Of a stretch of DNA of 64,000 bases, positions 40,101 to 63,859 are shown in pieces. Positions within the stretch are counted from its first letter, which is position 1; each line of letters begins with the position of its first letter. This DNA is from Pristiophorus japonicus. Its lineage: Eukaryota. A program made the translations under genes and the position numbers. Under the pieces are notes generated by a model that saw nothing but the letters and a program-made list of their open reading frames with translations, was not told the origin of the DNA and ran no database searches. The stretch spans positions 68,944,001 to 69,008,000 of the forward strand of contig NC_091987.1 of NCBI RefSeq assembly GCF_044704955.1, in the 5' to 3' direction.

Positions 40101-43100
40101 TTTGGGGCTATGTTGATGTCAATGATGGATCGGATCAGGCGGAAGTCCGTCCAGCAGTCGTCAACTCCTGTCATGGCGCAGGTGATGCGCACATCCTTGC
40201 GATCCCTGGCTCAGACGATGACACTTTTGTCATGTGGAGAGAGGCCAACTCTCTTGCCCCCAGAACTGCAGGCCAATGCTGCATTAAATTCAATGGCCTG
40301 ATGAGGGCAGACAAGGTAACACACTGGCTGCTCTCTTTCTTCCTTTGGTAGCAGCGCACCCTTCAGGCGCAGCTTTCTACACTCTTCTTTCTCTTTAAAC
40401 CCAAGGGGGTTATACTTATTCATTCTTGGCTTGTACTCCCATTTCCTGTAGATCCAATGCAGCAATAGGGTCTGATGATGAAGAACAGAAAAGAATGGAA
40501 ATCATCTTTGTGGACTGTGAGGATGACTATCCTGAGGGGGATAATAATGATGGAGAGGATGTGAAGGTCAAGCTCGGCAAAAAAGCACATCAGTTACCTG
40601 ACGTGTGCGTAGCCAATATTACACAAATTCCCCCGTGCCAGCCTGAAATGCCGGGTGCCATAAATGTTGAGTGCAGTTGTGACTTTCACCCCAGCAAACA
40701 GTTGTCAGGGCAGATGACCATGCCTGCAGGTCCTTCATGCAGCTTTCCTATTGCCTCTTTGATGACATGCAGCGTTCAATACATATACCCTCTCTAAGGT
40801 CTTCTCGGGACCTGCATTTCATGTATATACTTTTGGGGATGGAGGGGAGGGTAATATTTTGTGGCCTCGCTCTCCTTTCCTCCATCCTCTCTCCTCCCTC
40901 CTGTGGAAGGAGAGGGGGGCAAAATATCATGGTGTCGTACATTCCCACAGACAGTGAGGAGCAATCCAAGGCTGAAAGCGGGAAAAAAATCATTCAAACG
41001 TAATTCCCAGCTGCAGTAATTGCGACTCAAACTTTCAGCTGTCCTCGGGCTCAAAAGCTCCTTACTTTCACCAGTACCAGCTGATCCTAGCAGCAGCTGC
41101 GCCTTATAAAATTTGTTATGGGGATTTGGGTGGTGCTAGAAAGGCCACATTATTGCTCATCCCTATTTTTCCTGGTGGTGGTGGGACTTCTGGAACTGCT
41201 GCAATCCTTGTGGCAGTGGTGCTCCCACAAAGTGCGAAAGAGGGAATTCCCAGATATTGATATTGAGTGAAGATTTAGGAACAATGATACAAGTCAAGTC
41301 AGGATGGTGTATCAATTGGAAGGGAGCTTGGAAATGATGGCGTTTCCAAGTTCTTGTCCTTCTCGGTGATGGAAGGTGCTCTTGAAGTAATCTTGGTGAG
41401 TTGCTGCAATACATCCTGTAGATTATAAATAGTGCAGCCATATTGTGCTGGTAGTGAACAGGCCGGATTTTGAGTCCAGCAGTAAGGGGCAGCAATCGAA
41501 CAAACTGCCTTAACCTGGATAATGTTGAGTATCTTCCTGTTGTTGCCACACACATACAGGCATGTTTATCATATCCCTGACTTGAGCTTTGTAAAATGGT
41601 GAATAGACTTTGAATTATGGGGATGCACTACCCATCATTGCAAATTGACTGTTGTGTTTGCCTACATTGCAGGAGTGACAATAATTCACAGCCAATTAAT
41701 TCGCTGTAAAGTGCTTTGGGATATCCTGAGGTCATGAAAAGGTGCTATATAAATACTCTTTTCTCATTCAAATTCACTCACCAATATTTTTCATGCCTGT
41801 TTGATTGTGGTGGAATTAGTATCTGAATTAGACCTCTATGTATGTAACAGTTCCACATTATCTTGTGGTCTCTTACTTTCCCAGTCTCAATAGTTTCTTA
41901 ATGTACAAATAAATTGAATGTTGAGGCTGAATTTACCATTTTGTTGCATGAAACTATTATTGGTCATTTCTCTCTCAGTGTAATAATTTCTCAGTGGACC
42001 AGCATGCTGCACGTGGTGGCAGGTCACTTGGATCAAATCAGCCTTACCTATGTTACTCTGGACGGCTCTGTGACTCCTAAACATCGTATGGATCTCGTAG
42101 AGGAATTTAACACTGACCCTAAAGGACCTCAGGTACCAACTGGCTGCTCTTTTGGGTTTTCTTGTGGGAAAAGAACCACTGATCCAGAATACTAAGGGAG
42201 CTTTGTTTTATTTCCAATTATCTTAGTTGAAGGTGCTAATGTGTGATCAGGTACAGTTGTTGGCATCCTTCTAGTACTGTACAAATTTGTGAACTTTGAG
42301 CGAGGTTAGGCTGTGCTTAACTTTGGTGCATACACTTTCCCCTTACCCCTCGGGAAAATAGCCCTGTAACACTTCCAGTCTAACCTTGTATATGAGGAAT
42401 GGATGTTTGGATGAGGTACTAGAACGCTGCTGGTACCCATGGGACCATATTCCAGCATGTGTCACCATCTTTGAGAGGTGGAAAGAAAATTGGACAAAAA
42501 TAAATTCTATCGTGGTTTGCATGCGGTGGTTTATATATCGGGTATTTCAACAATGGTGCCCATTACTAAAAATGTAATACAAGTTCATTGCATGTTGGGA
42601 AATCTATGGATATAGTCAAATCTACTTGGTTAAATCACTGTTTGTATGCGCTCTGTTTATTTAAATATGGGGGTCCTTTATTTAAACCTGTGTGGTATCA
42701 GTAATGTGTAGTTTCTAAGACTTGATTATCTTGGGCATGCTTTCTTTCTAAATACTTACTCTTTTATCACAGGTCATGTTGGTCTCTCTGTGTGCTGGGG
42801 GTGTGGGTTTGAATCTCATTGGAGGCAACCATCTTTTCCTGTTAGATATGCACTGGTAAGATTAAGAATCAACACTAATGCAGATAGTTACAGCATGTAT
42901 TAAAATGCGATATTGGAAGAAAGGATACCTATTCCTTGCTGGACTGTGCGTGTGGATAGTTTTACAATGTTGCCTATAAACAACTACCTGATTTCAAACA
43001 TTTCAATTATCAATGTATTAAATCATGTTAATACCACACTGTAATGTATGCTCACAGGTTTGTAGAGCTGTTGAGTTCGGAGTCACGTGATGTTCACAAG

Positions 43101-49100: not shown

Positions 49101-52100
49101 CCTGCCACATCTAATGGTGAAGAGCTTTGATCTGATCTGTTATTTATGGGATCGCTTGGCTCTGCCTAGCATGCTGCTTCTGCTATTTAGCTCTGTGTTG
49201 TAGCTTTCATCAGGTTGGCACCTCATTTTCAGCAATGCCTGGCATGCTCTTCTACACGCCTCATTGAACCAGAGTTGGTCACCTAGCTTGATGGTAATGG
49301 TAGAGTAAGGAATATGCCGGGCCATGAGATTACAAATTGTGGTGCAATACAATTCTGCTGCTGCTGCTGATGGCCCACAGCGCCTCATGGATGCCCAGTT
49401 TTGAGCTGATAGATCTGTTCTGAGTCTATCCCATTTAGCACGGTGGTAATGCCACACAACACAATGAAGAGTGTCCTCGGTGTGAACTTGGAGCTTCATC
49501 TCCACATGGACTGGGTGATGGTCACTCCTCCCAACACTGTCATGTACAGTTGTATCTGCGACAAGTAGATTGATGAGGACAAGGTCAAGTTTTTCCTTCG
49601 TTCATCTCCTGCCGCAAGCCCATTCTGGCAGCTATGTCCTTCAGGACTTGGTCAGTTGTGATGCTACTGAGTCACACTTTGTGATGGACACTGAAATAAC
49701 CCATCCAGAGTATATTCTATGCCCTTGCTACCACAGTGCTTCTTCCAAGTGGTGTTTAACATGATTCATCAGCTGAGAGAGGGCGTTTCGTGGTAATCAG
49801 CAAGGTTTCCTTACCCATGTTTGGCAAGGTGCCATGAAACTTCATGGGGTCCAGAATCAATGTTGAGAACTCCCAAGGCCACTCCCTCCCGACCGTATAC
49901 CATTGTGTCACCACCTCGGGTGGGTCTGTCCTGCCGGTGGGACAGGACATTCCCAGGGATGGTGATGGAGAAGTCTGGGACTTTGGCTGAAAGGTATGAT
50001 TCTGTGAGTATGACTATGTGAGGCTGTTGTGTGACTAGACTTTGGGACAACTTTCCCAATTTTGACACAAGTCCCCAGATGTTGGTGAGGAGGATTTTGC
50101 AGGGTTCGCTGGGCTCGGTGTGCCGTTGTCATGTCCGAATCAGAGGTCGATGCTGGGTGGTCCGACCGGTTTTATTCTTACTGTAGTTTTTGTAATGGTT
50201 TGTTACAACTGAGTGGCTTGCTAGACCATTTCAGAGGGCAGTTAAGAGTCAATCACATTGCTATGGGTCTGGTGTTGTATATAGGCCAGACCAGGTAAGG
50301 AGGCAGATTTCCTTCCCTAAAGTACATTAGTGAACCAGTTGGGGGTTTTACAACAATCCAATAGCTTCATCGGTCACCATCACTGATGGTAGCTTTTTAT
50401 TCCAGATTTTTTTTTCAATTAGCTGAAATCAAATTCACAAACCGCCGTGGTGCGAGTTGAACTCACGATTCTGGATTATTATTCCAATCCCCTGGATTAC
50501 TATTCCTGTAACATAACCACGATGCTACTGTACCCTAACCAGAATATTACCAGGGCTCCGAGGGTTAAATTATGAGGAGAGATTAGGTAAATTAGGCTTG
50601 TATTCCCTGGAATAATAGAAAGTTAAGGGGTAATTTGATTTGAGGTTTGTAGGATTTTGAAAGGAATCGATGGGGTCGATAGAGAGAAACTTTTTAAGCT
50701 GGTGGAGGAGTCTAGGACAAGTGGACATAACCTTAAAAGCAGAATCAGGCTATTCAGGAGAGAGGTTAGGAAACAGGGCTTCACAGAAATGGTGGTAGAA
50801 GTGTAGAACTCTCTCCCACAAAAAACAGTAGATGCTAGCTCAATTAATAATTTTAAATCTGAGATATATAGATTTTTGCAAGCCAAGAGTATTCAGGGAT
50901 ATGGAGCCAAGGCAGGTAAATGGAATAGGATACAGATCAGGCATGGTCTCATTGAATGGTGTAACAGGCTCGAAGGGCTGAATGGCCTACTCCAGTTCCT
51001 ATGTAAATCATTCTCTCTTGGATCAGTGAGTGCCACAGTTTTAAAGCACTTTAGTATCTGCATTCTCAGCTTTTTTGAAAAAGTTAATTTGAACACGTGT
51101 CTACATCAAGGTCCCAGGCCTTGTTGAAAAGGACAAAGTGTGTTTCAGGCCAGGCTTATAATCTGCAGACCCTGAAAATATAGCATTCTATCTGGGTCAA
51201 AGTGTCCCTTGAATCGTTATCAATTTTCACCAGTTTCAGATGGATCCGATTGTTTATTGCAGCTGAAGTTAGAACGTGTTACATAGAAACATAGAAAATA
51301 GGTGCAGGAGTAGGCCATTCGGCCCTTCTAGCCTGCACCGCCATTCAATGAGTTCATGGCTGAACATTCAACTTCAGTACCCCATTCCTGCTTTCTCGCC
51401 ATACCCCTTGATCCCCCTAGCAGTAAGGACCTCATCTAACTCCTTTTTGAATATATTTAGTGAATTGGCCTCAACAACTTTCTGTGGTAGAGAATTCCAC
51501 AGGTTCACCACTCTCTGGGTGAAGAAGTTCCTCCGCATCTCGGTCCTAAATGGCTTACCCCTTATCCTTAGACTGTGACCCCTGGTTCTGGACTTCCCCA
51601 ACATTGGGAACATTCTTCCTGCATCTAACCTGTCTAACCCCGTCAGAATTTTATATGTTTCTATGAGGTCCCCTCTCATTCTTCTGAACTCCAGTGAATA
51701 CAAGCCCAGTTGATCCAGTCTTTCTTGATAGGTCAGTCCCGCCATCCCGGGAATCAGTCTGGTGAACCTTCGCTGCACTCCCTCAATAGCAAGAATGTCC
51801 TTCCTCAGGTTAGGAGACCAAAACTGTACACAATACTCCAGGTGTGGCCTCACCAATGCCCTGTACAACTGTAGCAACACCTCCCTGCCCCTGTACTCAA
51901 ATCCCCTTGCTATGAAGGCCAACATGCCATTTGCTTTCTTAACCGCCTGCTGCACCTGCATGCCAACCTTCAATGACTGATGTACCATGACACCCAGGTC
52001 TCTTTGCACCTCCCCTTTTCCTAATCTGTCACCATTCAGATAATAGTCTGTCTCTCTGTTTTTACCACCAAAGTGGATAACCTCACATTTATCCACATTA

Positions 52101-52952
52101 TACTTCATCTGCCATGCATTTGCCCATTCACCTAACCTATCCAAGTCGCTCTGCAGCCTCACAGCATCCTCCTCGCAGCTCACACTGCCACCCAACTTAG
52201 TGTCATCCGCAAACTTGGAGATACTACACTCAATCCCCTCATCTAAATCATTAATGTACAGTGTAAACAGCTGGGGCCCCAGCACAGAACCCTGCGGTAC
52301 CCCACTAGTCACTGCCTGCCATTCTGAAAAGTACCCATTTACTCCTACTCTTTGCTTCCTGTCTGACAACCAGTTCTCAATCCATGTCAGTACACTACCC
52401 CCAATCCCATGTGCTCTAACTTTGCACATCAATCTCTTGTGTGGGACCTTGTCGAACGCCTTCTGAAAGTCCAAATATACCACATCAACTGGTTCTCCCT
52501 TATCCACTCTACTGGAAACATCCTCAAAAAATTCCAGAAGATTTGTCAAGCATGATTTCCCTTTCACAAATCCATGCTGACTTGGACCTATCATGTCACC
52601 TCTTTCCAAATGCACTGCTATGACATCCTTAATAATTGATTCCATCATTTTACCCACTACCGATGTCAATCTCAACAATTCGTGAATAATACATTGCTGT
52701 CAAAATGCCTAATACATGAAATTTTGTGGCAAATTAGATTTCACTATAAAAGGTTATGCTGCAATCAGTAATGGTAATATTTTTTAAACAAATGTATGTT
52801 TTACTAGGTTTGTTTGTGAGGGAACTATTGAGGACAAAATCTTTGAACTTCAGGAGAAGAAAAAGGAACTAGCAAAGAAGGTGCTGTCAGGAACTGGAGG
52901 ATCCTTTACCAAACTTACACTGGCTGATCTTCGAATTCTATTTGGTGTGTGA
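7074..52952 (+). CDS. TTF2: TTF2, 3' 14 coding exons: join(7074-7187,10445-10595,13481-13586,14009-14208,14489-14642,23669-23760,25007-25095,33707-33849,34459-34629,36302-36360,41979-42132,42773-42855,44238-44312,52808-52952); 5' exons lie upstream of the window
   Basis: Manually spliced 1736-nt open frame with consistent phases. SNF2 motifs [68 protein letters not shown]-terminus [13 protein letters not shown] matches the recalled vertebrate TTF2 end. Confidence 0.95.
7330..7405 (+). mobile_element. tRNA-derived SINE head fragment
   Basis: A-box-like region plus B-box GGTTCAAGCCC. Confidence 0.5.
7413..8410 (-). mobile_element. Internal fragment of a second CR1 family (RT N-terminal half)
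   Basis: ORFs 7483..7866, 7812..8144, 8068..8319 ([26 protein letters not shown]). Confidence 0.88.
8760..9778 (+). mobile_element. CR1 3' end interrupted by an RTE insertion
   Basis: [11 protein letters not shown]...[13 protein letters not shown]; resumes at ~9562 and ends in a ttctatga tail. Confidence 0.85.
9072..9561 (+). mobile_element. RTE-clade LINE 3' fragment
   Basis: [16 protein letters not shown]...RMPDTR...GGQRK; C-terminal CxxC...HLRTH. Confidence 0.85.
10445..10595 (+). CDS. TTF2: TTF2 exon (motif Ia, [14 protein letters not shown]...YHGP)
   Basis: acag|AT...GC|gtgag; phase 1/2. Confidence 0.93.
10856..11654 (+). mobile_element. Non-autonomous DNA transposon (MITE), probably Harbinger-type
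   Basis: TIRs GAGTTCAATTTTCC / GGAAAATTGAGCCC; homologous inverted copy at 17267-18118. Confidence 0.75.
12031..13440 (-). mobile_element. CR1 (second family) 3' portion, RT
   Basis: ORFs 12211..12660, 12638..12925, 12942..13199. Confidence 0.9.
13481..13586 (+). CDS. TTF2: TTF2 exon ([19 protein letters not shown])
   Basis: tatag|G...AAT|gtaag; phase 2/0. Confidence 0.92.
14009..14208 (+). CDS. TTF2: TTF2 exon (motifs [15 protein letters not shown]...[11 protein letters not shown])
   Basis: ttcag|GTC...AA|gtaag; phase 0/2; within ORF 13937..14212. Confidence 0.95.
14489..14642 (+). CDS. TTF2: TTF2 exon ([14 protein letters not shown]...LLLRRMK...GKPL)
   Basis: ttcag|G...CTG|gtata; phase 2/0. 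Confidence 0.94.
14982..15593. mobile_element. MITE related to the 10856 family
   Basis: Imperfect TIRs GGGTCCAATTTTCCAC / GTGAAAATTCAACCC. Confidence 0.55.
15890..16460 (+). mobile_element. CR1 3' fragment of the young subfamily
   Basis: [19 protein letters not shown]..., near-identical to the end of ORF 18322..21228. Confidence 0.9.
17267..18118 (-). mobile_element. MITE, inverted copy of the 10856-11654 family
   Basis: TIRs GAGCTCCATTTTCCCC / GGGGAAAATTGAGCCC; both subterminal regions are reverse complements of the 10856 copy. Confidence 0.78.
18322..21228 (-). CDS. CR1 ORF2p: APE endonuclease + reverse transcriptase
   Basis: LNARSI, GITETW, YRPP, MGDFN, SDH; RT motifs [23 protein letters not shown]; no stops. 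Confidence 0.95.
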   Translation of the reverse strand: MRKSVGQRNPRQRTKRATVQQNSKRTKGVNKTSLKALCLNARSIRNKVDELIVQIDVNKYDVIGITETWLQDDQGWELNIQGYSTFRKDRIKGKGGGVALLVKEEINAIVRKDISLDDVESIWVELQNTKGQKTLVGVVYRPPNSNRDVGEGIKQEIRGACNKGVAVIMGDFNMHIDWASQTGSNTVEEDFLECIRDGFLDQYVEEPTRGEAILDWVLCNERGLISNLIVRGPLGKSDHNMVEFCIRMENETVNSETMVQNLKKGNFEGMRRELARIDWRMILRRLTVDGQWQTFRDRMDEVQQLYIPVWRKNKKGKVAQPWLSREIRDSIKAKEVAYKLARNSSEPGDWEKFRTQQRRTKGLIRTGKMEYEKKLAGNIKADCKSFYRYVKRKRLVKTNVGPLQSESGEVITGNKEMADQLNKYFGSVFTKEDTNNLPDIKGVRGSSKEEELREIFISREIVLGKLMGLKADKSPGPDGLHPRVLKEVALEIADALTVIFQHSIDSGSVPMEWRVANVTPLFKKGGREKTGNYRPVSLTSVVGKMMESIIKDVIAVHLENGDMIGPSQHGFVKGKSCLTNLLEFFEDVSSKVDKGEPVDVVYLDFQKAFDKVPHKRLMCKVKAHGIGGSVLTWIENWLSDRKQRVGVNGYFSEWQAVTSGVPQGSVLGPQLFTLYINDLDEGIKCSISKFADDTKLGGSVSCEEDAIRLQSDLDRLGEWANAWQMKYNVDKCEVIHFGGKNRETDYYLNGDRLGKGKVQRDLGVMVHQSLKVGMQVQQAVKKANGMLAFIARGFEYRGREVLLQLYRALVRPHLEYCVQFWSPNLRKDILAIEGVQRRFTRLIPGMAGLTYQERLDQLGLYSLEFRRMRGDLIETFKILTGLDRLDAERMFPMLGKSRTRGHSLRIRGKPFRTEMRRNFFTQRVVNLWNSLPQKVVEANSLNIFKRELDEVLTTRGIKGYGEKAGRGY
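21306..22253 (-). CDS. CR1 ORF1p: CxxC..CxxC zinc finger/leucine zipper + SGNH (GDSL) esterase
   Basis: CSSC...CGKC, coiled-coil heptads, IGDSIVR, HIGTNDI, DGLHL. Confidence 0.92.
   Translation of the reverse strand: MAGELGRVLCSSCTMWELRDASGVPDDYVCGKCIRLQLLTVRVTELELRVDSLWSIHDAENDVSITCSELVLPQGKGPQPDREWKTSRKSRARKVVQGSPAVIPLQNRYTALGTVEGNDSSGEGSSSQVHGTVAGSAAQEGKKKSGRAIVIGDSIVRGIDRRFCGRNRDSRMVCCLPGARVKDVSERVQDILKWEGEQPVVVVHIGTNDIGKKRDEVLRNEFKELGAKLKSRTSKVVISGLLPVPRDSQSRNRRIAQMNTWLEQWCSREGFKFLGHWDRFWGRWDQYKPDGLHLGRTGTNVLGGVFASAVGEDLN
22421..22856. repeat. Tandem array of ~5 GC-rich 83-bp monomers at the LINE 5' end
   Basis: GGCCTTTATAGGCC recurs at 22464, 22547, 22630, 22713 and 22796 (period 83), near-perfect identity. 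Confidence 0.95.
23669..23760 (+). CDS. TTF2: TTF2 exon (VALPQR...[14 protein letters not shown])
   Basis: tgcag|GTT...AG|gtata; phase 0/2. Confidence 0.92.
25007..25095 (+). CDS. TTF2: TTF2 exon ([12 protein letters not shown]...DNPFNR)
   Basis: catag|G...G|gtaaa; phase 2/1. Confidence 0.9.
25310..26870 (-). mobile_element. Degenerate CR1 3' fragment interrupted by a MITE
   Basis: CR1 3'UTR/RT sequence on both sides of 25928-26547. Confidence 0.75.
25928..26547. mobile_element. MITE inserted in CR1
   Basis: TIRs GGGCCCAAATTTGATC / GATCAATTTCGGGTCCC. Confidence 0.65.
27033..30283 (-). mobile_element. Young CR1 copy, 5'-truncated within ORF1, ORF2 disrupted
   Basis: ORFs 28449..30137, 28151..28426, 27432..27932, near-identical to the full-length copy. 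Confidence 0.95.
31341..33230 (+). mobile_element. CR1 (second family) RT + 3' end with composite tail, nested in a GC-rich repeat (~30993-33600)
   Basis: [17 protein letters not shown] 32316..32819; tttctatg tails at ~33210 and ~33380. Confidence 0.85.
33707..33849 (+). CDS. TTF2: TTF2 exon (VAREFG...[21 protein letters not shown])
   Basis: ttcag|TA...ACG|gtaag; phase 1/0; tandem CAGTAG acceptor. Confidence 0.92.
34459..34629 (+). CDS. TTF2: TTF2 exon ([20 protein letters not shown]...KSTK)
   Basis: tatag|GCT...AAG|gtatg; phase 0/0. Confidence 0.92.
34800..36110 (-). mobile_element. Old SINE fragment followed by a degenerate L2-like LINE 3' region
   Basis: L2-type tail (taaggcagtatataaatacaagttg on -) and purine-rich degenerate RT-like sequence. 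Confidence 0.5.
36302..36360 (+). CDS. TTF2: TTF2 exon ([19 protein letters not shown])
   Basis: gccag|ATC...AG|gtaca; phase 0/2. Confidence 0.9.
36531..37231. mobile_element. MITE with 16-bp TIRs and 3-bp TSD (ATT), Harbinger-like
   Basis: att|GGCCCTGAAATTCCGG ... CCGGAATTTCAGTGCC|att. Confidence 0.8.
37798..40220 (-). mobile_element. RTE-clade LINE, 5'-truncated and frameshifted
   Basis: [43 protein letters not shown]; (GAT)n tail. Confidence 0.9.
40220..40900 (-). mobile_element. Second, more degenerate Harbinger transposase relic
   Basis: Frameshifted pieces [11 protein letters not shown] / [12 protein letters not shown] / FQAGTGNLCNI / [11 protein letters not shown]; the first two match the relic at 1-355. 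Confidence 0.55.
41979..42132 (+). CDS. TTF2: TTF2 exon (motif [13 protein letters not shown]...DGSV...FNTDPKGPQ)
   Basis: ctcag|T...CAG|gtacc; phase 2/0. Confidence 0.94.
42773..42855 (+). CDS. TTF2: TTF2 exon (motif [29 protein letters not shown])
   Basis: cacag|GTC...TG|gtaag; phase 0/2. Confidence 0.94.
43040..43323 (+). mobile_element. Solo LTR (284 bp)
   Basis: TGTAATGTAT...ATACATTACA inverted termini, internal AATAAA, flanks CACAC/CACAT. Confidence 0.7.
43330..43742 (+). mobile_element. CR1 3' fragment
   Basis: [17 protein letters not shown]..., cttatgttc tail. Confidence 0.88.
44238..44312 (+). CDS. TTF2: TTF2 exon (motif [19 protein letters not shown])
   Basis: ttcag|G...AG|gtaac; phase 2/2. 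Confidence 0.94.
45090..46600 (+). mobile_element. Penelope-like retroelement relic (RT + GIY-YIG), with a small CR1 tail inserted at ~45931-46020
   Basis: [26 protein letters not shown]; [12 protein letters not shown]; RFTEHLRSV. Confidence 0.82.
46700..47522 (-). mobile_element. RTE-clade LINE 3' fragment
   Basis: [30 protein letters not shown]...HLRTH; (GAT)n tail. Confidence 0.88.
47770..48437 (+). mobile_element. Old CR1 ORF2 fragment, probably continuing the relic at ~44790-45085
   Basis: Degenerate ANFNGMR...PW...KSPGPDG.HPRVL. Confidence 0.55.
48440..50530 (-). mobile_element. Degenerate APE-RT non-LTR element of a third family (5' half); related pieces at ~62060-62345 and ~63700-63850
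   Basis: [47 protein letters not shown]. Confidence 0.75.
50540..51005 (+). mobile_element. Old CR1 3' fragment
   Basis: LNYEERL...LYSLE; CR1-type 3'UTR. Confidence 0.75.
51281..52668 (-). mobile_element. Young CR1, 5'-truncated, open RT frame (434 aa)
   Basis: ORF 51374..52678, near-identical to the ORF2 C-terminal half at 18322. Confidence 0.95.
52808..52952 (+). CDS. TTF2: TTF2 terminal coding exon ([11 protein letters not shown]...[10 protein letters not shown])
   Basis: actag|G...GTG TGA; stop at 52950-52952. Confidence 0.94.
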
Positions 52953-56890: not shown

Positions 56891-56896
56891 TTTATT
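56891..56896 (-). terminator. Polyadenylation signal AATAAA of the VJ-C1 gene
   Basis: AATAAA on - followed by a T/GT-rich downstream element (acttttTGTTactaattttGTTTTgatGTT). Confidence 0.65.
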
Positions 56897-56912
56897 CAGA
56901 CCTTCCGAAACT

Positions 56913-56934
56913 CTACCTTCCAGAAGGACAGGAG
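56913..56934 (-). CDS. Short cytoplasmic exon (C)SCPSGR*
   Basis: ttgcag|C after a 99-nt intron, TAG at 56915-56913; an upstream aag acceptor would give a longer tail. Confidence 0.6.
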
Positions 56935-59900
56935 CTGCAATGGCACAAGAGCTTTTGAGAAATGAAATAGGACATATTAGAATTATGCTAATGTTTATTA
57001 CACATAAGCATGCTAAATAAATGTAGATCTTACCATTTACTTAGGAATCTGATGCAGATCACTACCATCAGTAACAAACTCATTCCCACACAGACAGTGA
57101 GGTAGCGTATCATTACTGGATCAAAACAGCCATCTGTAAATAGAGTACATAGGGTGAGGTCACCCTTCTGTGCTAATAGTTTGATAACCTGTTAATGCAC
57201 TCCTAAGAAATTATGTTGCTCCTTTATTTTTTAACTAAGGTATTTTAACTGGGTTAACACATTTATCAAAATAACAAATCCAGATCTGTCATAGATACCG
57301 TCAGGGCCGTCTCTTTCCCCTAAGTGATCTGAGGATCTTCTAATGGAGATGACTTATGCTACTCTAGATATTGTATAATAGCATAACCCATGTTGTAACA
57401 ATAGTCTCTGCTCGTGATCTGAACTTGCTTTTTCTTTTACGTGTGCTTCTTTAATCTTCTCCAAGCGAATGAAGCAAACATGGTGAGGCAAGGTCAGATA
57501 TGAATCGTAAAGCTGCTTTATGACATAGTAGGGAAAACAACAGATATGCTTTGATTCACTTAATTAAATCAGTTCAACTTATCTTCACGTATTAATACAA
57601 AATAAAACTACGCTTCCCCACATCAACAGTCTGTCTTACTGACTTTTTAAACAAAATGCCTTCCAACTATCCTCCAGCATTTCTAAACTCTCCGTCAGCG
57701 AAAACTCTTGCAGCTTTCTGTTTGAAAACCTGACTGACTGCCAGTGTCTCTGTCTCTGCTTTTATCTCCCTTTGTTGACAGAGATCAAAAATGGACAAAC
57801 TGTTTCAATGCGACACACTCCAACAGAGACAATTAGACACTATAGCTTGCAGGTTTTCAGCGTCTCAATCATCAACCAATCAATCTGACTGGCTGTATAT
57901 GATTTACTTCTCCTAACAATCAAGTGTAGGAAGATGAAAAACTTAAGATACTGGTCCAAAAAATATCAGTTGAACTGATTAAAATTTTATAGTATAAATT
58001 ACATTAATCTGGCAATTCTGTATTAACTAAAATCCTGTGATTCAGCATATTACTGCAAGTCATTATACCGAAACAGGCATTTGAAAAGTTCATAATTGTG
58101 TTTTTAGTTTGTCTTATTATAGATTAACAGCATATTTGTGTTGTTTCAGTTTGTAGATATGCAGTTAACTTGTGATTTTAAATGGAGAACCAATTGCCTT
58201 CCATGTATATGTGTCTGTATGGTTACCTATTAATACAGCATTAAATGATTTTCAATTGATTGATTTATGTACAAATCAAATACTGAATGAAATCTACCAA
58301 CATGTTACTTCAGAGCCCATTTCTCTTGCTGCCTGGCTGTCTATCCAACTCTCCATTTGCTTAGTCTTTTGTCTGGACTGTTGACCATCTCTTGGGTCAG
58401 TCCCAGTTACTGATTAGCTATCGCTGTGACCATGTTTCTGTCTGGTTCTCCCAATGCATGTTTATCAATGTCACTATTTGTCTATCTGGTAACTCATTTA
58501 TCTTCACTGCGACACTTGTGTCCTTATTAATTATAAATGTACAATATTAGAATCACATGTATATTCTAATTAGTTCTGCCCTTTGGTTATATTTATAAGA
58601 AACAAAACATTGTATTATATATAACAAAATCAGTGTAAAAGAAACTTGTTTTTAATTATAAGGAGTTATCCTATTTTATCATGTGATATATGCTGCAGTG
58701 TAATTTAATTAAGTAACACTTATGTCTTCAAAACTATTACATTAATATTCACATTAATTAGTTTAAAATTAGAAAGTCATTTTATGTTATACTCTAAATA
58801 GACTTACAGGTAGTACTTTAGTGTATTTGAGGGACTGAGTTAAACGTTAATTATTACCTGGGAGGACTTTTATGGTGAGTTTTGCTTGATTGGATATTAT
58901 GCAAGTATTAGTTGGAACTGATCTTGCTAGAAATGCTATAACTGTCCTTTAAACAGAATATGTAAAGCACAGTAGTAATATTTTATGAATGCAATTTGAT
59001 GCAAAGGAAGACGGTGCACACGGATTGGAGTCAATTGTTCTTTTGATGGGCATTTTCGAGCAAAGCAATAGAAAATTCCCATCAAAAGGTATGTTTATCT
59101 CTCGTTAGGGGCCGTTTAAAATACCCTGTTCCATGTGTAGTACCACGCTGTACTTTACTGATATACAGTGAAGTATGTATCAGATACTGACCACACATGG
59201 CTTATCAAAATAATGATAGCCCCACACTTGAAATTCAGACGGTAAAACTTGGGACATTTCACAAATAGGCATTGTTTAGCAAACCAACTTTATCTTTTCA
59301 TAGATCCAGTCAAATACTTGGAGGGCAAATGTTATCTGATAAAGATCGACCTGAAATACATTTTAACAAAGTCACAGTATCTCTTATATAAATACCCCGA
59401 GTATCCGCTCGCTAATAGGAATAGCCGTTAAAAATTGTCACCTTCCTACAGACCCCATTATTGTACAGACAACTCGACCTGATCTACTCTCACTACAGTA
59501 ACCCTTCCCTGAATCGAACGGTAGCACACGATGACTTTTTTAAATCTCTCAAAGTGTGTGTATCAATTTTACCATCTGTGCGTGACCCGAATACTAATGT
59601 GCCTTTTCCACTCATGCATAAAACATTCATGTTTGGCATTCCACTGGTTGGATGTGGAGTAACTGGGAGCAACGAGCTGTGGGATTTATTCCCTCTGTGA
59701 ACAACTTACCTCCGCTGTCACTGAAACTTTTCCTCACTGACCCTTTGACTGTAAGGTGTTGAACCTGGCAGGTGATGGCGGTTCCCGGGTCCCAGCGAGT
59801 GTCTGTAATCCGCAGCCGGGAGCTCAGGTTGTAGGTGCCGTCACTGTTTACTTTCAGGGAGCCCGGTTCTGTTTGATAGGAGACATCTCCCGCGACAATC

Positions 59901-61201
59901 CAAGAAATGTTCACATCGCTCGGAAAAAATCCTGCAGCCACACAAATCAGAGACTGAATTCCAACAACTTCATTCTCGGGATCCGCAGAGAGATAGACGT
60001 CAGGTTTCGCTAAATAAACACAAATTAAATCAATCTGAGTTACAGCAAACATTTATAGAGAGCAACTGTGGATTAAACTTGTGCATATTTGACACTAAAT
60101 GGGAAATTGCAGAATCAATTTGATGTGATTTGTATGTTGATACATAATCTAAAGATACATATAATAAAATATAACGTACCCGAACGAAATACGAGCCAGA
60201 ATAATATCCCGTGATTTTACAATAAATTTCGTTTGAGCACAAATTCCCTTTGTTTTTCTTTAGACCAATATTAAGAAAATTTAAATAAATGACAATGCTT
60301 GTTTCACATAATCAGTGTCGCTATTTGCAATTCGCTTGTTATATAAATAATATTCCTGTTACTATAGAATCTTACAGCACAGAAGGAGGCCTGTCTCGGC
60401 TCTGTGACAGAGCTATCCAAAAGTCCCACAACCCTGCTCTTTCCTGCATTTTTTCCTTTTAAAGTATTTATCCAGTATTGGTATCAGCATTCTATAGTTT
60501 CGTCTTTTGGATATTTTTCTTCAAACGAAGGTTTTAAAAATTATATGAAAGTCCTGCTGTTAAAATAATATTGTGGAATTAAAGTTAAACGCTGGTGTAT
60601 TCAGCCCAGTCCCCAGGGCACCGAGCATGTCAGTCCCAGATTAGATCTGTGTATGGAGCTATTTCTGATTCCTTTGCCCTATACATTGAACTATTTCAGT
60701 TTTGGTTAATCTAATTACCTTGGATGTTCAGTTCTGTTCCCTCTCCTATAACCTGTTTCCAGGACTGAGGCTCATCTCTCAGAACCAGGCAGTGGTAAGT
60801 GTCCGAATCGTCCATAATCACTTCCCAAATAACAAGAGAACCCCCCGATACAGATACAGACACACGAGGGCTGTTATTGAGGAAATTCGTAGTTGCGATG
60901 TCTCTGATGTCAGGGTTGTCTCTTGTCCTGTACCAGTAATATCTCACCAACTCCACCAGCTCCTCTCCGGGTAACAGGGTGCAGTTGATCCGAGCAGTCT
61001 GTCCTCTCGGGAGGGACAGAGCTAGAGGAGACTGGATCACTTTCAGACCGACAGCAGGCCCTGGGACATAAAATTACAGGTAGGAACATGGCATTCAAAT
61101 GATCGGAGTAACAACTAGAATAAATCTCATCTGGGGAAAAATGAATACTTACCAAAGACAAGGAGCCACAGTTTGAGAACACTGTGTCTGAATGGGCCCA
61201 T
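56913..61201 (-). CDS. Non-rearranging antigen-receptor-like IgSF gene (L-VJ-C1-TM-cyt, ~270 aa): complement(join(61153-61201,60719-61060,59710-60009,57034-57133,56913-56934))
   Basis: Five exons, all GT-AG, phases 1/1/1/2, 813 nt open including the stop; V-set and C1-set consensus residues, hydrophobic TM, and AATAAA just after the stop. Confidence 0.88.
57034..57133 (-). CDS. Stalk/transmembrane exon DGCFDPVMIRYLTVCVGMSLLLMVVICIRFLSK
   Basis: tacag|AT...AAATG|gtaag; phase 1 matches the C1 exon; ~22-residue hydrophobic run. Confidence 0.82.
59710..60009 (-). CDS. C1-set Ig constant-domain exon
   Basis: tttag|CG...GGAG|gtaag; KPDVYL...LICVAAGFFPSDVNISW...NSDGTYNLSSRLRI...WDPGTAITCQVQH. Confidence 0.93.
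60719..61060 (-). CDS. V-set Ig exon with germline-joined J-like G strand
   Basis: cccag|GG...CAAG|gtaat; VIQSP...ARINC...YYWYR...DDSDTYHC...IGEGTELNIQ. Confidence 0.93.
61153..61201 (-). CDS. Leader exon MGPFRHSVLKLWLLVF(G) of the VJ-C1 gene
   Basis: ATG at 61201-61199, 49 nt, TTTG|gtaagt donor, 92-nt phase-1 intron; leader completed by GPAVG in the next exon. Confidence 0.85.
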
Positions 61202-61350: not shown

Positions 61351-63859
61351 GGTCCCAGCTAAATATGGGACTCCCACCCTTCACTGCTGAATTAGTTTAC
61401 TTTAAGCATAGCATATTGTGATATAATTTACTTTATTATCAATGCAATGTGTAAACATTCTGGGCCTATTTCTTTATGGATTTTATTACATACTTGTGTT
61501 ATAATGGATGGGGGTACTGTTGGGGTTGGAGCAGCCGCCCCCCCCCCCCCAACCCAAAGCCTCCACGCCCATGTTCTTGATGGCCATGGCCTCAAGAATT
61601 CTTACTCCGGCTCTGTATCCAGTCTCCTTCAGCTCTATTCCCCTCTGTCAGACCAACAGCAGGCATTGTAAAATTTAAATTACGTTATTAAAAGATAAGG
61701 GAAGCTGAAAACTGCGCAGAACTGCAGTAAATAGTTTTTTTTCAAATGAACATGAAAGCTGACCAAAGACCATGAAGTGGAATTGAAGAATCTAGGTCCA
61801 GGCCTCCTCTCCTGACCTAGTTGCTGATCAGAGACAATCAACTTGAAATTGAAGTTTACTGAAGTGGTCAAGTACATCACCTCACAATACTGCAAACTCG
61901 TTCCAAAAGCATGCCGACAAGTTCAGTAATTTAGTTAAATGCAGGAAAAGAATATTTTTATTTTTAGATGAACAGTCATTTGCTCAAGTGGGCAAGAAAG
62001 CCACTTTGATTGTTGTTATTGATGGTCGGGATATAGGCATGACTGGCAAGGCTGGCATTTCTAGTCTGTGGGACAGCTCTCCCAATTTTGGCACAAGTCC
62101 CCAGATGTTTGTGAGGAGGACTTTGCAGGGTCAACTGGGCTGGGTGTGCTTTTGTTGTGTTCAAAACAGATGCCTAAGTCAATGCCAGGTGGTCATTGAG
62201 TTTTTTGTAGCGGTTCAATACAACCGAGTGGCTAGCTAGGCCATTTCAGAGGGCAGTTAAGAGTCAATCACATTGCTGTGTGTCTGGAGTCACACGCAGG
62301 CCAGACTGGGTAAGGAGATCAGGTTTCCTTCTCTGAATGAGATTAGTCACATTTTTTCTTCGTAAAGCAATAATTTTGTTTAATTACCATTTCTGATTGC
62401 AGCATAACCCTTTGAACCAAAGGTTGTGGCATAGTGGTATACAGTCAGGAAGGAGTGACAGGGAGTTGTCAACATTGACTCTGGACTGTAAGCGGGCGGG
62501 GGGGGGGGGTGAATTGGGAGTTTGTGTTCTCTATGAGGGGGTCGGGTTCCCTTTTGACCAACTTGAGCGGTTCGAATCACTACCACTCCCTTGGGTTCTG
62601 TACTCTGGATTTATTTGGGGGGTGTGACAAAAGTGCAGAGGACACTGGTTTGATGCAAAGAGCTATGGTTTTATTGCAGTGAAGGTAACACAGACTTATT
62701 ACTCTAGTAAGAAAATACACGGCCAAACTTACAATCACTCTAATAAAGGACAGTACAAGGAAAGGTACAAGGTCAAACTTAAAATCACAAATCACTCGAA
62801 TAAAGAACCATGCACTACACATTCAAAGGGGGTTGCAGTAAAATTATACATCCCACCTACCAACACCTAATTTTAGCTAGGCTAGATTCCAGGGCAGGCA
62901 GGGGACTTATGCTTACCAATCCTTTTGATAGTTAATGGTAGATCATGATGTTCTTCCTTCCTTCAGGACTTCAAGACTTCGAGGCTGGAGAAGTTAGTTT
63001 ATAACTGTCATGTTGGTTTCTCTCCTTGTCTTGATGAGGTAGTGGCAGCCTTGTAGCTACCTAGCAACCACCTCTCTCCCTAACTCCTGTTGAAAACAGT
63101 GGCCAGTTATACGATTTCAGTGTTCTAATCTGAGCGCCAAATCTCTTCAAAATCCTTTGTATAATTTTGGTGGGCTTGGTTCTTTGTAATATTTTGTCGG
63201 GCTCGTTAAAAGTTGATATGTCTTGGGTGGATTGATGTTCGAAAACTGTTTCTTGATGGAAATATTAGTTTGGTAATTGCAATGTCCTTTTGTGCTTGGT
63301 CTTTTGCATACAGGCTGGATTGGGCCTCTGCGTGATGTATATGCTGAAATGGTTGTCCAGACCCATGTTGATGGGGAGCTACCTCTGGGTGATTTTCTGA
63401 TGTTAATGTCTCTTGTGGAGAAGGATTTTCAAATACTCAATCTTCTAGACAGGTTAACTCAGTTCTCACACCCAGGTAGCTTTACTTAATTAGACTGTCT
63501 CTTGCTAGCTCCGTAGGTCCGCCCACAGCCTTGAGTTTGTCTTTTAAAATCCAAAATTCTATTAAAGTTTGTAGTTTCTTCCATAAGCACTTTAGAGTTC
63601 CAAATTTTTCGGTAGATAGTTCCAAATTAAATTTCCTTTCAAATGAACCCAAACACTGGGGGGTGGGGGGTTTCTTGTGAATTTTGCATTCCTTCAGCAC
63701 CCCATGAAGTTTCATGGCATCAGGTCGAATATGGGCAAGGAAACCTCCTGCTGATTACCACCTCCCACCCTGACTGAGCTGATGATAAGGTACTCCTCCA
63801 TGTTAAACACCACTTTGCAGAAGCACTGAGGCAAGGGCACAAAATATACTTGTCCATTG

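What the first reader, a model, noticed from the sequence alone, without database searches (positions are those of the whole stretch)
56891..61201. Non-rearranging, germline-joined VJ-C1 antigen-receptor-like gene next to TTF2
Seen: a complete spliceable gene (leader / V+J-like strand in one exon / C1 / stalk-TM / short tail / AATAAA) encoding ~270 aa. The V exon runs from DDSDTYHC through a 13-residue CDR3-like loop (LVLRDEPQSWKQV) into IGEGTELNIQ|gt, a J-type GxGT strand ending in a phase-1 donor, with no RSS or D/J segments. Established: V(J)+C1 pairing is the architecture of TCR chains and Ig light chains, and C1 domains are largely confined to Ig/TCR/MHC/B2M/tapasin/SIRP; non-rearranging VJ-C1 genes (the PRARP/VJC1 type, and shark UrIg) have been proposed as relics of the pre-RAG receptor. 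Inference: this is a TCR-chain-shaped invariant receptor in a cartilaginous fish, either an orthologue of such relics or an undescribed lineage.
Basis: partly seen in the sequence, partly recalled or inferred. Interest (0 to 1): 0.92.

Follow-up and report, generated by a model that had tools for sequence, protein, structure and literature searches.

The report
Shark SIRP-like activating receptor gene
This is a real, intact shark gene for a small non-rearranging immune receptor (an antibody-like V domain, one C1 domain and a membrane anchor carrying an arginine); it belongs to a receptor family found in every shark and ray checked, so it is interesting for immune evolution but not a unique relic.

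Summary
On the minus strand, five GT-AG exons encode 270 aa: a leader, a single V exon ending in a J-type GxGT strand, a C1-set exon, a stalk/transmembrane exon and a 7-aa tail. No RSS is present.

The gene is not an orphan. The V exon's only strong matches among 1.84 billion proteins are V-C1-TM proteins from 13 shark and ray species (55-76% identity). NCBI names them inconsistently as SIRP-like, TCR-beta-like or Ig-kappa-like.

The family has two forms. Long forms have an uncharged TM and 2-4 ITIM/ITSM tyrosine motifs. Short forms have a conserved TM arginine and a motif-free tail. The window's TM exon matches only the short forms of rays.

My best reading is the activating-type partner of a SIRP-like paired-receptor family. 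The closest V-C1 alignment inspected among solved structures is human SIRP-alpha d1-d2. Paddlefish and bichir carry collinear homologues at 32% identity.

Orthology to SIRP, PRARP or B7-H6 could not be resolved. The neighbour's identity as TTF2 is unverified; it is an SNF2-family gene.

First readers of this scan noted similar VJ-C1-TM genes on other pieces of the same genome (unchecked).

The parts
61153..61201 (-). Exon 1: start codon and signal peptide (MGPFRHSVLKLWLLVF + 1 nt), donor gtaagt, phase 1
   Evidence: Sequence read. Splice check. tblastn match to the leader of sawfish P0002. Near-identical to the Heptranchias P0056 leader MGPFRNIVLKLWFLVL.
60719..61060 (-). Exon 2: complete V-set domain with the J-like strand in the same exon (non-rearranging VJ)
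   Evidence: Pfam V-set E 1.2e-9. phmmer E 2.3e-33 to catshark P0001. 72% identical to Heptranchias. No RSS.
60750..60788 (-). CDR3-like loop LVLRDEPQSWKQV, the 13 residues between Cys90 and the J-like strand
   Evidence: Translation. The loop is conserved across species (consensus LRxxPRPWK), so it is an invariant surface and not a diversified one.
60720..60749 (-). J-like G strand IGEGTELNIQ (GxGT motif), followed by a phase-1 donor
   Evidence: It aligns with the SIRP-alpha segment GAGTELSVRAKP in the profile alignment.
59710..60009 (-). Exon 3: C1-set Ig domain (LICVAAGFFPSDVNISW ... YNLSSRLRI ... TCQVQH)
   Evidence: Pfam C1-set E 2.3e-16. C1 hallmarks FFP, 13 residues from Cys to Trp, and xVxH, as defined in PMC2785349. 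AlphaFold model pLDDT 85.7 with 7 strands. VIA-align Z 13.8, rmsd 1.9 A over 92 residues, to the MHC-II beta2 C1 domain; B7-H6, IgG CH3 and UrIg2 are tied within 1 Z. 76% identical to Heptranchias.
57034..57133 (-). Exon 4: stalk (DGC) plus transmembrane helix VMIRYLTVCVGMSLLLMVVICI plus RFLSK
   Evidence: Translation. Kyte-Doolittle 19-residue means up to 2.4. tblastn of sawfish short form P0040 residues 234-256 lands exactly here, E 0.002, 57% identity. blastp matches only short forms P0040, P0052 and P0053.
57105..57107 (-). Codon of the transmembrane arginine, conserved in all short forms
   Evidence: Alignment by eye of the window TM with P0040 (PVIVRHF..), P0052 (PFILRAV..) and P0053 (PFISRTV..).
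57126..57128 (-). Stalk cysteine codon, a possible interchain disulfide
   Evidence: It is not conserved in the ray short forms (DNYLIP, DDYLIP).
56913..56934 (-). Exon 5 (tentative): last 7 residues CSCPSGR and the TAG stop
   Evidence: Canonical ag acceptor and correct phase. No homology support. Read-through of the exon-4 donor gives an alternative stop after ...FLSKW.
56891..56896 (-). AATAAA polyadenylation signal; a second one lies at 56994-56999
   Evidence: Pattern scan.

Best explanation
The locus is an intact, non-rearranging gene for a 270-aa type I membrane protein: signal peptide, VJ-type V domain, one C1-set domain, short stalk, transmembrane helix with an arginine in its outer third, and a motif-free tail of about 10 residues.

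It is the short-tailed, 'activating-type' member of a SIRP-like paired-receptor family that all examined sharks and rays share. More distant collinear relatives exist in paddlefish and bichir.

Shown:
- the domain identities and the gene structure;
- membership in the family;
- the split of the family into long forms (uncharged TM, 2-4 ITIM/ITSM tyrosines) and short forms (Arg-TM, no motif);
- homology of the window's TM exon to the ray short forms;
- lineage-wise co-evolution of the short-form and long-form ectodomains.

Inferred:
- The invariant V domain binds a conserved self or pathogen ligand that the inhibitory partner also recognises.
- The TM arginine recruits an Asp-bearing ITAM adaptor (of the FcR-gamma, DAP12 or CD3-zeta type), so ligand binding activates Syk/ZAP70-type signalling, while the long partners recruit SHP phosphatases.
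- The window-specific stalk cysteine may make a disulfide-linked dimer.
For: Gene and domains:
- Pfam gives V-set 1.2e-9 and C1-set 2.3e-16.
- All splice sites are canonical with consistent phases, giving 813 nt.
- The C1 model has pLDDT 85.7 and a C1-set fold at Z 13.8.

Family:
- phmmer of the V exon against 1.84 billion representatives gives only 8 hits at E<=1e-10. The top four (2.3e-33 to 2.8e-18) are V-C1-TM proteins of catshark, sawfish, stingray and numbfish.
- Further members bring the count to 13 elasmobranch species.

Paired forms:
- Long forms carry LHYASV, TEYAVL, VHYSTV and TIYASL-type motifs. Short forms P0040, P0052 and P0053 carry none.
- Short forms share the TM pattern P-x-I-x-R...VG.SLLLL.VI with the window.
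- The window's TM exon is hit by P0040 at E 0.002 and only by short forms.
- The sawfish short and long genes have identical C1 domains and near-identical V domains. The V and C1 trees follow the shark/ray split, not the short/long split.
- tblastn finds no long-type TM or tail exon in the window.

SIRP likeness:
- The family profile aligns contiguously to human SIRP-alpha d1-d2 at 68.6 bits, E 4e-18, including GTELSVRAKP against GTELNIQAKP.
- NCBI names most members SIRP-beta-1-like or SIRP-alpha-like.

Definitions used:
- Paired receptors are an ITIM form plus a short-tailed form with Arg or Lys in the TM that binds an ITAM adaptor (PMC3533184).
- SIRP-alpha/beta are an example (PMC12975943).
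Against: - No transcript evidence: no RNA run was listed.
- The inhibitory partner is not in this window.
- The adaptor is unknown. A 2014 survey found no FcR-gamma homologue in the shark assemblies then available (PMC4016189).
- SIRPs have two C1 domains and a TM lysine; this gene has one C1 and an arginine.
- The V exon alone scores best with Ig kappa VL, VNAR and TCR V-alpha, and no SIRP V is among its 60 best PDB hits.
- The C1 fold is equally close to MHC-II beta2, B7-H6, IgG CH3 and UrIg2, so 'SIRP-like' describes design and best V-C1 alignment, not proven orthology.
- The stalk cysteine is not conserved in the ray short forms.
Confidence: 0.7

Rival explanations
1. The gene is a surviving descendant of the pre-RAG antigen-receptor precursor. 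It would be a TCR-chain-like invariant receptor, orthologous to the PRARP type or a sister of UrIg, that pairs through its C1 domain and stalk cysteine and signals like a TCR chain through a basic TM residue.
For: - It has a single-exon VJ with a canonical GxGT strand followed by a true C1-set domain.
- It has a stalk Cys and a TM Arg.
- UrIg2 V-C1 is the second-best contiguous match, at 63.3 bits.
- Bony-vertebrate relatives found here fit what I recall of the PRARP description (VJ plus ITIM, absent from mammals). These are paddlefish V-C1-TM-ITIM and frog V-TM-ITIM.
- PRARP and UrIg are cited as such relics in PMC10751288.
Against: - The family shows the ITIM versus Arg-TM paired design of innate receptors.
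- The stalk Cys is absent from the ray short forms.
- There is only one basic TM residue, and I saw no TCR-like TM motif.
- The CDR3-like loop is conserved, not diversified.
- UrIg and UrIg2 carry many C1 domains (PMC12227049).
- No PRARP sequence could be obtained, so orthology is untested.
- 'Relic' status cannot be shown from one locus.
Confidence: 0.15
2. It belongs to the B7-H6 / tapasin-related V-C1 group. On this reading it is a cell-surface ligand or chaperone-like molecule, not a receptor.
For: - The B7-H6 C domain is among the top structural matches, with the highest identity of the tied set (Z 13.6-13.7, 29-33% identity).
- NCBI names the paddlefish homologue 'NCR3LG1-like / tapasin-related'.
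- The Atlas lists NCR3LG1 and tapasin-related clusters among the nearest, at 0.95.
- The C1 exon also hits CD80-like C2-set at 3.5e-6.
Against: - A canonical GxGT J strand is typical of SIRP and antigen-receptor V domains.
- An Arg-TM short-tailed form paired with ITIM-tailed forms is a receptor design (PMC3533184).
- The structural Z values are tied within 1 across MHC-II, IgG CH3, B7-H6 and UrIg2, so they do not discriminate.
- The Atlas scores are leads only.
Confidence: 0.06
3. It is an unexpressed or decaying duplicate: an intact-looking gene copy with no function.
For: - No RNA run could be listed.
- The window is crowded with CR1-type retrotransposons.
- The last exon has no homology support.
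- The V branch is somewhat long in the tree, at 0.29 against a median of 0.11.
Against: - All five exons are open with consensus splice sites.
- Every Ig hallmark residue is kept: Cys26, Trp42, DxxxYxC, GxGT, FFP and xVxH.
- The TM arginine and TM pattern are conserved with rays.
- The C1 folds confidently.
Confidence: 0.07
4. It is an ordinary germline-joined shark IgL or TCR cluster gene.
For: - Sharks do have germline-joined Ig clusters.
- The V exon's best PDB hits are Ig kappa VL, VNAR and TCR V-alpha.
- Some family members are auto-named 'Ig kappa-like' or 'TCR beta-like'.
Against: - Those PDB matches are weak (27.9 bits or less).
- No Ig or TCR appears among the 38 significant hits in 1.84 billion proteins.
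- The protein has a TM anchor and ITIM-tailed paralogues, and its loop is conserved across species.
- No RSS, J or D segments are nearby.
Confidence: 0.02

Closest known systems
SIRP family (SIRP-alpha inhibitory, SIRP-beta activating; mammals, birds, reptiles)
   Same: - An N-terminal V-set domain with a J-like GxGT strand runs straight into a C1-set domain. The junction is GTELNIQAKP here and GTELSVRAKP in SIRP-alpha.
- SIRP-alpha d1-d2 is the best contiguous V-C1 alignment inspected among solved structures (68.6 bits).
- The family has ITIM-tailed members with up to four tyrosine motifs, and short-tailed members with a basic TM residue and near-identical ectodomains.
   Different: - One C1 domain instead of two. 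Some rays have two through a recent tandem copy.
- The TM residue is Arg near the outer face, not the Lys of SIRP-beta.
- The V exon alone is not closest to a SIRP V.
- The neighbour is an SNF2/TTF2-like gene, which from my own knowledge is not the setting of the human SIRP cluster.
- CD47 binding is unknown and orthology is unproven.
[quoted passage not shown] 2019, cited in PMC10751288)
   Same: Both are non-rearranging single-exon VJ domains on a membrane protein. The long paralogues carry ITIMs. Relatives found here occur in ray-finned fish and frogs but not in mammals.
   Different: No PRARP sequence or paper text was available, so nothing could be compared directly. My recollection of the PRARP architecture is from memory only. 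The window's gene itself has no ITIM.
UrIg / UrIg2 (non-rearranging shark Ig-like genes; PMC12227049, PDB 9dmx)
   Same: Both are elasmobranch, with a non-rearranging VJ exon followed by true C1 domains. UrIg2 V-C1 aligns at 63.3 bits, and its C domains are structural matches (Z 12.9).
   Different: UrIg2 has a VJ plus nine C1-type domains and forms Fc-like homodimers. This gene has one C1, an Arg-TM and a short tail, and it belongs to a paired-receptor family.
TCR chains / Ig light chains
   Same: The V(J)+C1 order and exon layout match, and both have a basic residue in the TM. The window also has a membrane-proximal cysteine.
   Different: - No RSS and no separate J.
- The CDR3-like loop is conserved.
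- Sequence similarity is only weak.
- ITIM-tailed paralogues exist.
- The stalk Cys is not conserved in the family.
B7-H6 (NCR3LG1) and tapasin-related proteins
   Same: Both have V + C1 + TM architecture. The B7-H6 C domain is among the top structural matches at 29-33% identity. The paddlefish homologue is auto-named after them.
   Different: Those proteins are ligands or chaperones, without Arg-TM activating counterparts. The canonical GxGT J strand and the paired design point to a receptor.

Membership tests
C1-set Ig domain | (F/Y)(F/Y/H)P at the start of the BC loop, exactly 13 residues between the strand-B Cys and the strand-C Trp, and xVxH after the strand-F Cys (PMC2785349) | tested here: met
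   CVAAGFFPSDVNISW has 13 residues between C and W and contains FFP. TCQVQH gives QVQH. Pfam C1-set E 2.3e-16.
C1-set Ig domain | Seven-strand C1 fold matching solved C1 domains | tested here: met
   AlphaFold pLDDT 85.7 with 7 strands. VIA-align Z 13.8, rmsd 1.9 A over 92 residues, to MHC-II beta2; B7-H6, IgG CH3 and UrIg2 are tied.
Non-rearranging VJ gene | V domain and J-type GxGT strand encoded in one exon, with no RSS | tested here: met
   One open exon, 61060..60719, ends in IGEGTELNIQ|gt. No heptamer plus nonamer at 12 or 23 bp spacing in 56-62 kb.
Paired immune receptors (functional class, PMC3533184) | Closely similar ectodomains shared by inhibitory and activating members | tested here: met
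   Sawfish short P0040 and long P0039 have identical C1 domains and differ by one residue in V. Short and long forms cluster by lineage.
Paired immune receptors (functional class, PMC3533184) | Inhibitory members carry ITIMs; activating members have a short tail and Arg or Lys in the TM | tested here: met
   Long forms carry 2-4 [SIVLT]xYxx[ILV] motifs and short forms none. The window and P0040, P0052 and P0053 share the TM Arg.
Paired immune receptors (functional class, PMC3533184) | Activating member associates with an ITAM adaptor | not testable with these tools
   This needs co-expression and co-IP. The adaptor repertoire of sharks was not examined here. A 2014 survey found no FcR-gamma in sharks.
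Paired immune receptors (functional class, PMC3533184) | Members lie in a small gene cluster | not tested
Unchecked scan notes report ITIM-tailed VJ-C1 genes on other pieces of this genome.
SIRP family | V-set domain followed by two C1-set domains | tested here: not met
   This gene has only one C1 exon, and most members have one C1. Two rays have a recent tandem C1 copy.
SIRP family | Sequence closest to SIRPs rather than to other V-C1 proteins | tested here: inconclusive
   The profile gives SIRP-alpha d1-d2 68.6 bits, against UrIg2 63.3 and Ig V-C about 44. Only the five top alignments could be inspected, the V exon alone prefers VL, VNAR and V-alpha, and no named reference set was available for a tree.
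SIRP family | Binds CD47; the beta form pairs with DAP12 through a TM lysine | not testable with these tools
   The residue here is Arg, not Lys. The ligand and adaptor need experiments.
Rearranging antigen receptors (TCR / IgL) | V segment flanked by an RSS, with separate J (and D) segments | tested here: not met
   One search finds no RSS. V and J are contiguous in one exon.
PRARP | Orthology to chicken PRARP1/2 and their fish, amphibian and reptile homologues | not testable with these tools
   The paper (PubMed 30770416) is not held and no PRARP sequence could be fetched.
UrIg / UrIg2 | VJ followed by an array of three or more C1 domains forming Fc-like dimers | tested here: not met
   The gene has a single C1 exon followed by a TM exon. 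UrIg2 architecture is from PMC12227049.

The most novel reading that the evidence does not exclude
This family would be the cartilaginous-fish branch of an ancient gnathostome VJ-C1 receptor lineage that includes the paddlefish, bichir and frog relatives and perhaps PRARP and SIRP. That lineage would descend directly from the pre-RAG antigen-receptor precursor. The Arg-TM, stalk-Cys short form would preserve the ancestral way in which a VJ-C1 chain coupled to ITAM modules before TCR and BCR existed. If the SNF2 neighbour really is TTF2, the gene would also sit in an MHC-paralogous (human 1p13-like) neighbourhood.
Probability: 0.12. Interest if true: 0.8.

Novelty: new member of a known kind. 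Interest (0 to 1): 0.5.

Why it matters
Few proteins outside the antigen-recognition system carry C1-set domains, and V(J)-C1 chains that never rearrange are the main candidates for what the RAG transposon invaded.

This locus shows that sharks and rays keep a whole family of such chains. The family is organised as inhibitory (ITIM) and activating-type (Arg-TM) partners, like mammalian SIRP-alpha/beta. Collinear relatives exist in basal ray-finned fish.

That would push a SIRP-like paired VJ-C1 design back to the base of jawed vertebrates. It also gives comparative immunologists concrete genes to place in trees with SIRP, PRARP, UrIg, B7-H6 and the antigen receptors.

I found no paper describing the family in the library searched. 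Public annotation gives it five mutually inconsistent automatic names.

The individual gene in this window is one ordinary member of that family.

Tried and rejected
- RNA evidence: the look-up of sequencing runs listed no run, so read laying was never used.
No neighbourhood comparison and no dN/dS were possible.
- Reference trees: all three homologous-protein searches returned only family members. These were whole P0040, the family profile, and the P0040 C1 region at E<=10. No named TCR, IgL, SIRP, PRARP or B7-H6 set was available. PDB u-numbers are not accepted as sequences. The trees therefore hold only family members plus paddlefish, bichir, two frog proteins and one skink SIRP-like protein. 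All other hits were left out.
- AlphaFold of full-length sawfish P0040 with 11 sequences gave pLDDT 51.5 and was not used for fold search.
- Complex prediction on two copies of the window's C1 exon gave no verdict (score 0.00). It is evidence neither for nor against dimerisation.
- The Atlas searches gave only undiscriminating leads at 0.94-0.96: SIRP-beta-like, NCR3LG1, tapasin-related and Ig-kappa-like.
- Literature searches for PRARP, VJ-C1 and SIRP in elasmobranchs found no description of this family. Three papers looked up by id were not held.
- TTF2 identity of the neighbour: only SNF2-family membership could be shown.
- The joined 270-aa model was never sent to any search or fold.
- Rejected: an ordinary germline-joined IgL/TCR gene, and UrIg orthology.

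Full report
OBSERVATION

The stretch 56891-61201 holds a five-exon gene on the minus strand.
- Exon 1 (61201..61153) encodes MGPFRHSVLKLWLLVF and ends in a phase-1 gtaagt donor.
- Exon 2 (61060..60719, 342 nt) is one open exon. It runs from the mature N-terminus through ...DDSDTYHC, the 13-residue loop LVLRDEPQSWKQV and the J-type strand IGEGTELNIQ into a phase-1 donor.
- Exon 3 (60009..59710, 300 nt) encodes a C domain.
- Exon 4 (57133..57034) encodes DGCFDPVMIRYLTVCVGMSLLLMVVICIRFLSK.
- Exon 5 (56934..56913), which is tentative, adds CSCPSGR and a stop. AATAAA follows at 56896..56891.

The coding total is 813 nt, or 270 aa. All introns are GT-AG. The stretch contains no N. A scan for heptamer plus nonamer at 12 or 23 bp spacing found no RSS.

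Pfam calls exon 2 V-set (E 1.2e-9) and exon 3 C1-set (E 2.3e-16). Exon 3 carries the three C1 hallmarks listed by Hatherley et al. (PMC2785349). These are FFP, exactly 13 residues between the B-strand Cys and the C-strand Trp, and QVQH after the F-strand Cys.

An AlphaFold model of exon 3 is confident (pLDDT 85.7, seven strands). It superposes on solved C1 domains at Z 13-13.8. MHC-II beta2, B7-H6, IgG CH3 and UrIg2 are all tied.

The joined 270-aa model was never sent to a search or a fold. Every search used single exons by reference.

IT IS NOT AN ORPHAN

phmmer of the V exon against 1.84 billion representative proteins gave only 38 hits at E<=0.001. The top four (E 2.3e-33 to 2.8e-18, 50-65% identity) are V-C1-TM proteins of Scyliorhinus canicula, Pristis pectinata, Hypanus sabinus and Narcine bancroftii.

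Searches seeded from these found members in 13 elasmobranch species, seven sharks and six batoids. NCBI's pipeline names them 'SIRP beta-1-like', 'tyrosine-protein phosphatase non-receptor type substrate 1-like', 'T cell receptor beta chain-like', 'Ig heavy chain Mem5-like' or 'Ig kappa light chain-like'. In other words, the family is uncharacterised.

The window's V and C1 are closest to Heptranchias perlo (72% and 76%) and Heterodontus (69% and 75%). No rearranging Ig or TCR V domain appears among the significant hits whose names I looked up.

TWO FORMS

Long forms (about 350-480 aa) have an uncharged TM (FSKYYYFSLLSLILIVPFCLWII). Their tail carries two to four ITIM/ITSM-type motifs, such as LHYASV, TEYAVL, VHYSTV and TIYASL.

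Short forms are sawfish P0040 and the rays P0052 and P0053, at 260-270 aa. They have no tyrosine motif and a different TM, P-[VF]-I-x-R-x-x-I-x-V-G-x-S-L-L-L-L-x-V-I, with a conserved arginine.

Sawfish P0040 residues 234-256 hit the window exactly at the predicted TM exon (57119..57051, 57% identity, E 0.002). The window's TM peptide matches only the three short forms. No long-type TM or tail exon exists anywhere in the 64 kb. The window's gene is therefore a dedicated short form, and it is the only shark Arg-TM member seen here.

In sawfish the short and long genes have identical C1 domains and differ by one residue in V. In ML trees of V and C1, rows group by lineage (sharks versus batoids, species by species) and never by short versus long. 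Ectodomains that co-evolve while the signalling ends differ is the textbook pattern of paired receptors (PMC3533184).

WHAT IT RESEMBLES

A profile of the family searched against all PDB sequences gives these scores among the five alignments that could be inspected.
- Human SIRP-alpha d1-d2: 68.6 bits, E 4e-18, contiguous across V, the J strand and C1. GTELSVRAKP aligns with GTELNIQAKP, GFSPRDITLKW with GFFPRDLNISW, and CEVAHVTL with CLVQHVTL.
- Shark UrIg2 V-C1: 63.3 bits.
- Ig V-C or CH3: about 44-45 bits.

SIRP-alpha/beta are the classic V-C1 paired receptors. Alpha has a four-tyrosine inhibitory tail. Beta has a six-residue tail and a basic TM residue that binds DAP12 (PMC12975943).

The likeness is of design and best alignment, not proven orthology.
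- SIRPs have two C1 domains and a TM lysine.
- The V exon alone scores best with Ig kappa VL, VNAR and TCR V-alpha (27.9 bits or less).
- The C1 fold does not discriminate among C1 subfamilies.
- No named reference set could be fetched for a tree.

OLDER RELATIVES

Paddlefish P0028 is auto-named 'NCR3LG1-like / tapasin-related'. It is 32% identical to the Heptranchias long form, collinearly through V, J, C1 and the TM (GGFPKYYYYFSLLSLILVAPFCLWIIK against GGVPQHYYYFLIVGLIVFVPVLIWILK), and it has ITIM-like tail motifs.

Bichir P0035 is similar. Frog P0021 is a V-TM protein with three such motifs. A skink SIRP-like protein, P0023, is 30% identical. P0029 is a long form recorded only under a UniParc identifier; its species is unknown to me.

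The lineage therefore predates the split of cartilaginous and bony fishes. These bony-vertebrate relatives may be the PRARP family of Fu et al. 2019, which is cited in PMC10751288. That paper is not held and no PRARP sequence was available, so this stays untested.

MECHANISM

Shown: a signal peptide, an invariant VJ domain whose CDR3-like loop is conserved between species (consensus LRxxPRPWK), one C1 domain, a hydrophobic TM (Kyte-Doolittle up to 2.4) with an arginine four residues into the helix, and a tail without motifs.

Inferred from the established rule for paired receptors (PMC3533184): the arginine recruits an Asp-bearing ITAM adaptor, and the receptor activates leukocytes on binding the same or a related ligand as its ITIM-tailed partner. 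From my own knowledge, an arginine near the outer face of the TM is more typical of FcR-gamma-coupled receptors than of DAP12-coupled ones. However, a 2014 survey found no FcR-gamma in the shark assemblies of that time (PMC4016189). The adaptor is therefore open.

The stalk cysteine could make a disulfide-linked dimer, but it is missing from the ray short forms. A test fold of two C1 copies gave no verdict.

WHAT COULD NOT BE DONE

- No RNA run was listed, so expression and the junctions are unverified.
- The neighbour on the plus strand is an SNF2-family helicase gene, with exons at 13937-14212 and 41914-42195 (Pfam SNF2-rel 4.9e-20). That it is TTF2 is plausible but not shown.
- First readers of this scan noted several other VJ-C1-TM genes on other pieces of the same genome. 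These include one with a 'SIRP-alpha-style four-tyrosine tail' and another 'Arg-TM' gene. Those notes are unchecked leads.

VERDICT

It overstated uniqueness and TCR likeness.

The gene is a new member of a known kind, a SIRP-like paired VJ-C1 receptor. Its family is widespread in elasmobranchs, and I found no description of it in the literature searched. Interest is moderate (0.5). It would be high only if the family proves to be a direct pre-RAG lineage, which I put at about 0.12.

Noticed in passing
window 18322-22253 (minus strand): An apparently intact CR1-type LINE: ORF2 of 968 aa (endonuclease plus reverse transcriptase) at 18322-21228, and an upstream ORF1 of 315 aa at 21306-22253. Many truncated copies fill much of the window, for example 28449-30137, 51374-52678 and 3606-4475.
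   Followed up: no
window 13937-14212 and 41914-42195 (plus strand): Exons of an SNF2-family helicase gene (Pfam SNF2-rel 4.9e-20; weak Helicase_C). It lies tail-to-tail with the receptor gene.
   Followed up: partly
P0040 versus P0039 (Pristis pectinata proteins): The sawfish short (Arg-TM) and long (ITIM) genes have different leaders but identical C1 domains and a single difference in V. This suggests very recent duplication or gene conversion between the partners.
   Followed up: partly
P0041 (Hypanus sabinus), P0065 (Mobula birostris): Ray long forms carry two nearly identical tandem C1 domains, giving a V-C1-C1 layout like SIRP by a recent internal duplication.
   Followed up: no
P0054 (Heterodontus), P0055 (Heptranchias): Annotated isoforms skip the TM exon and join the C1 directly to the ITIM tail (…SHSG|DSSIH…). 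They may be soluble forms or mis-spliced predictions.
   Followed up: no
P0059 (Hemiscyllium, 237 aa), P0061 (Cetorhinus, 216 aa): These are second family genes in sharks whose annotated C-termini stop just after C1. They may be short-form genes whose Arg-TM exon the annotation pipeline missed.
   Followed up: no
P0021 (Engystomops), P0006 (Phyllobates): Frog relatives of the V domain lack a C1 domain. P0021 is V-TM with three ITIM-like motifs and a TM start (HYFLYGLF) recalling the shark long forms.
   Followed up: no
window 61170-61186 (minus strand, inside exon 1): A lone CACAGTG heptamer lies within the leader exon, with no nonamer at 12 or 23 bp. I take it for chance.
   Followed up: yes
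window 61537-61552: A run of about 14 C residues lies just upstream of the gene, about 340 bp 5' of the start codon on the gene's strand.
   Followed up: no
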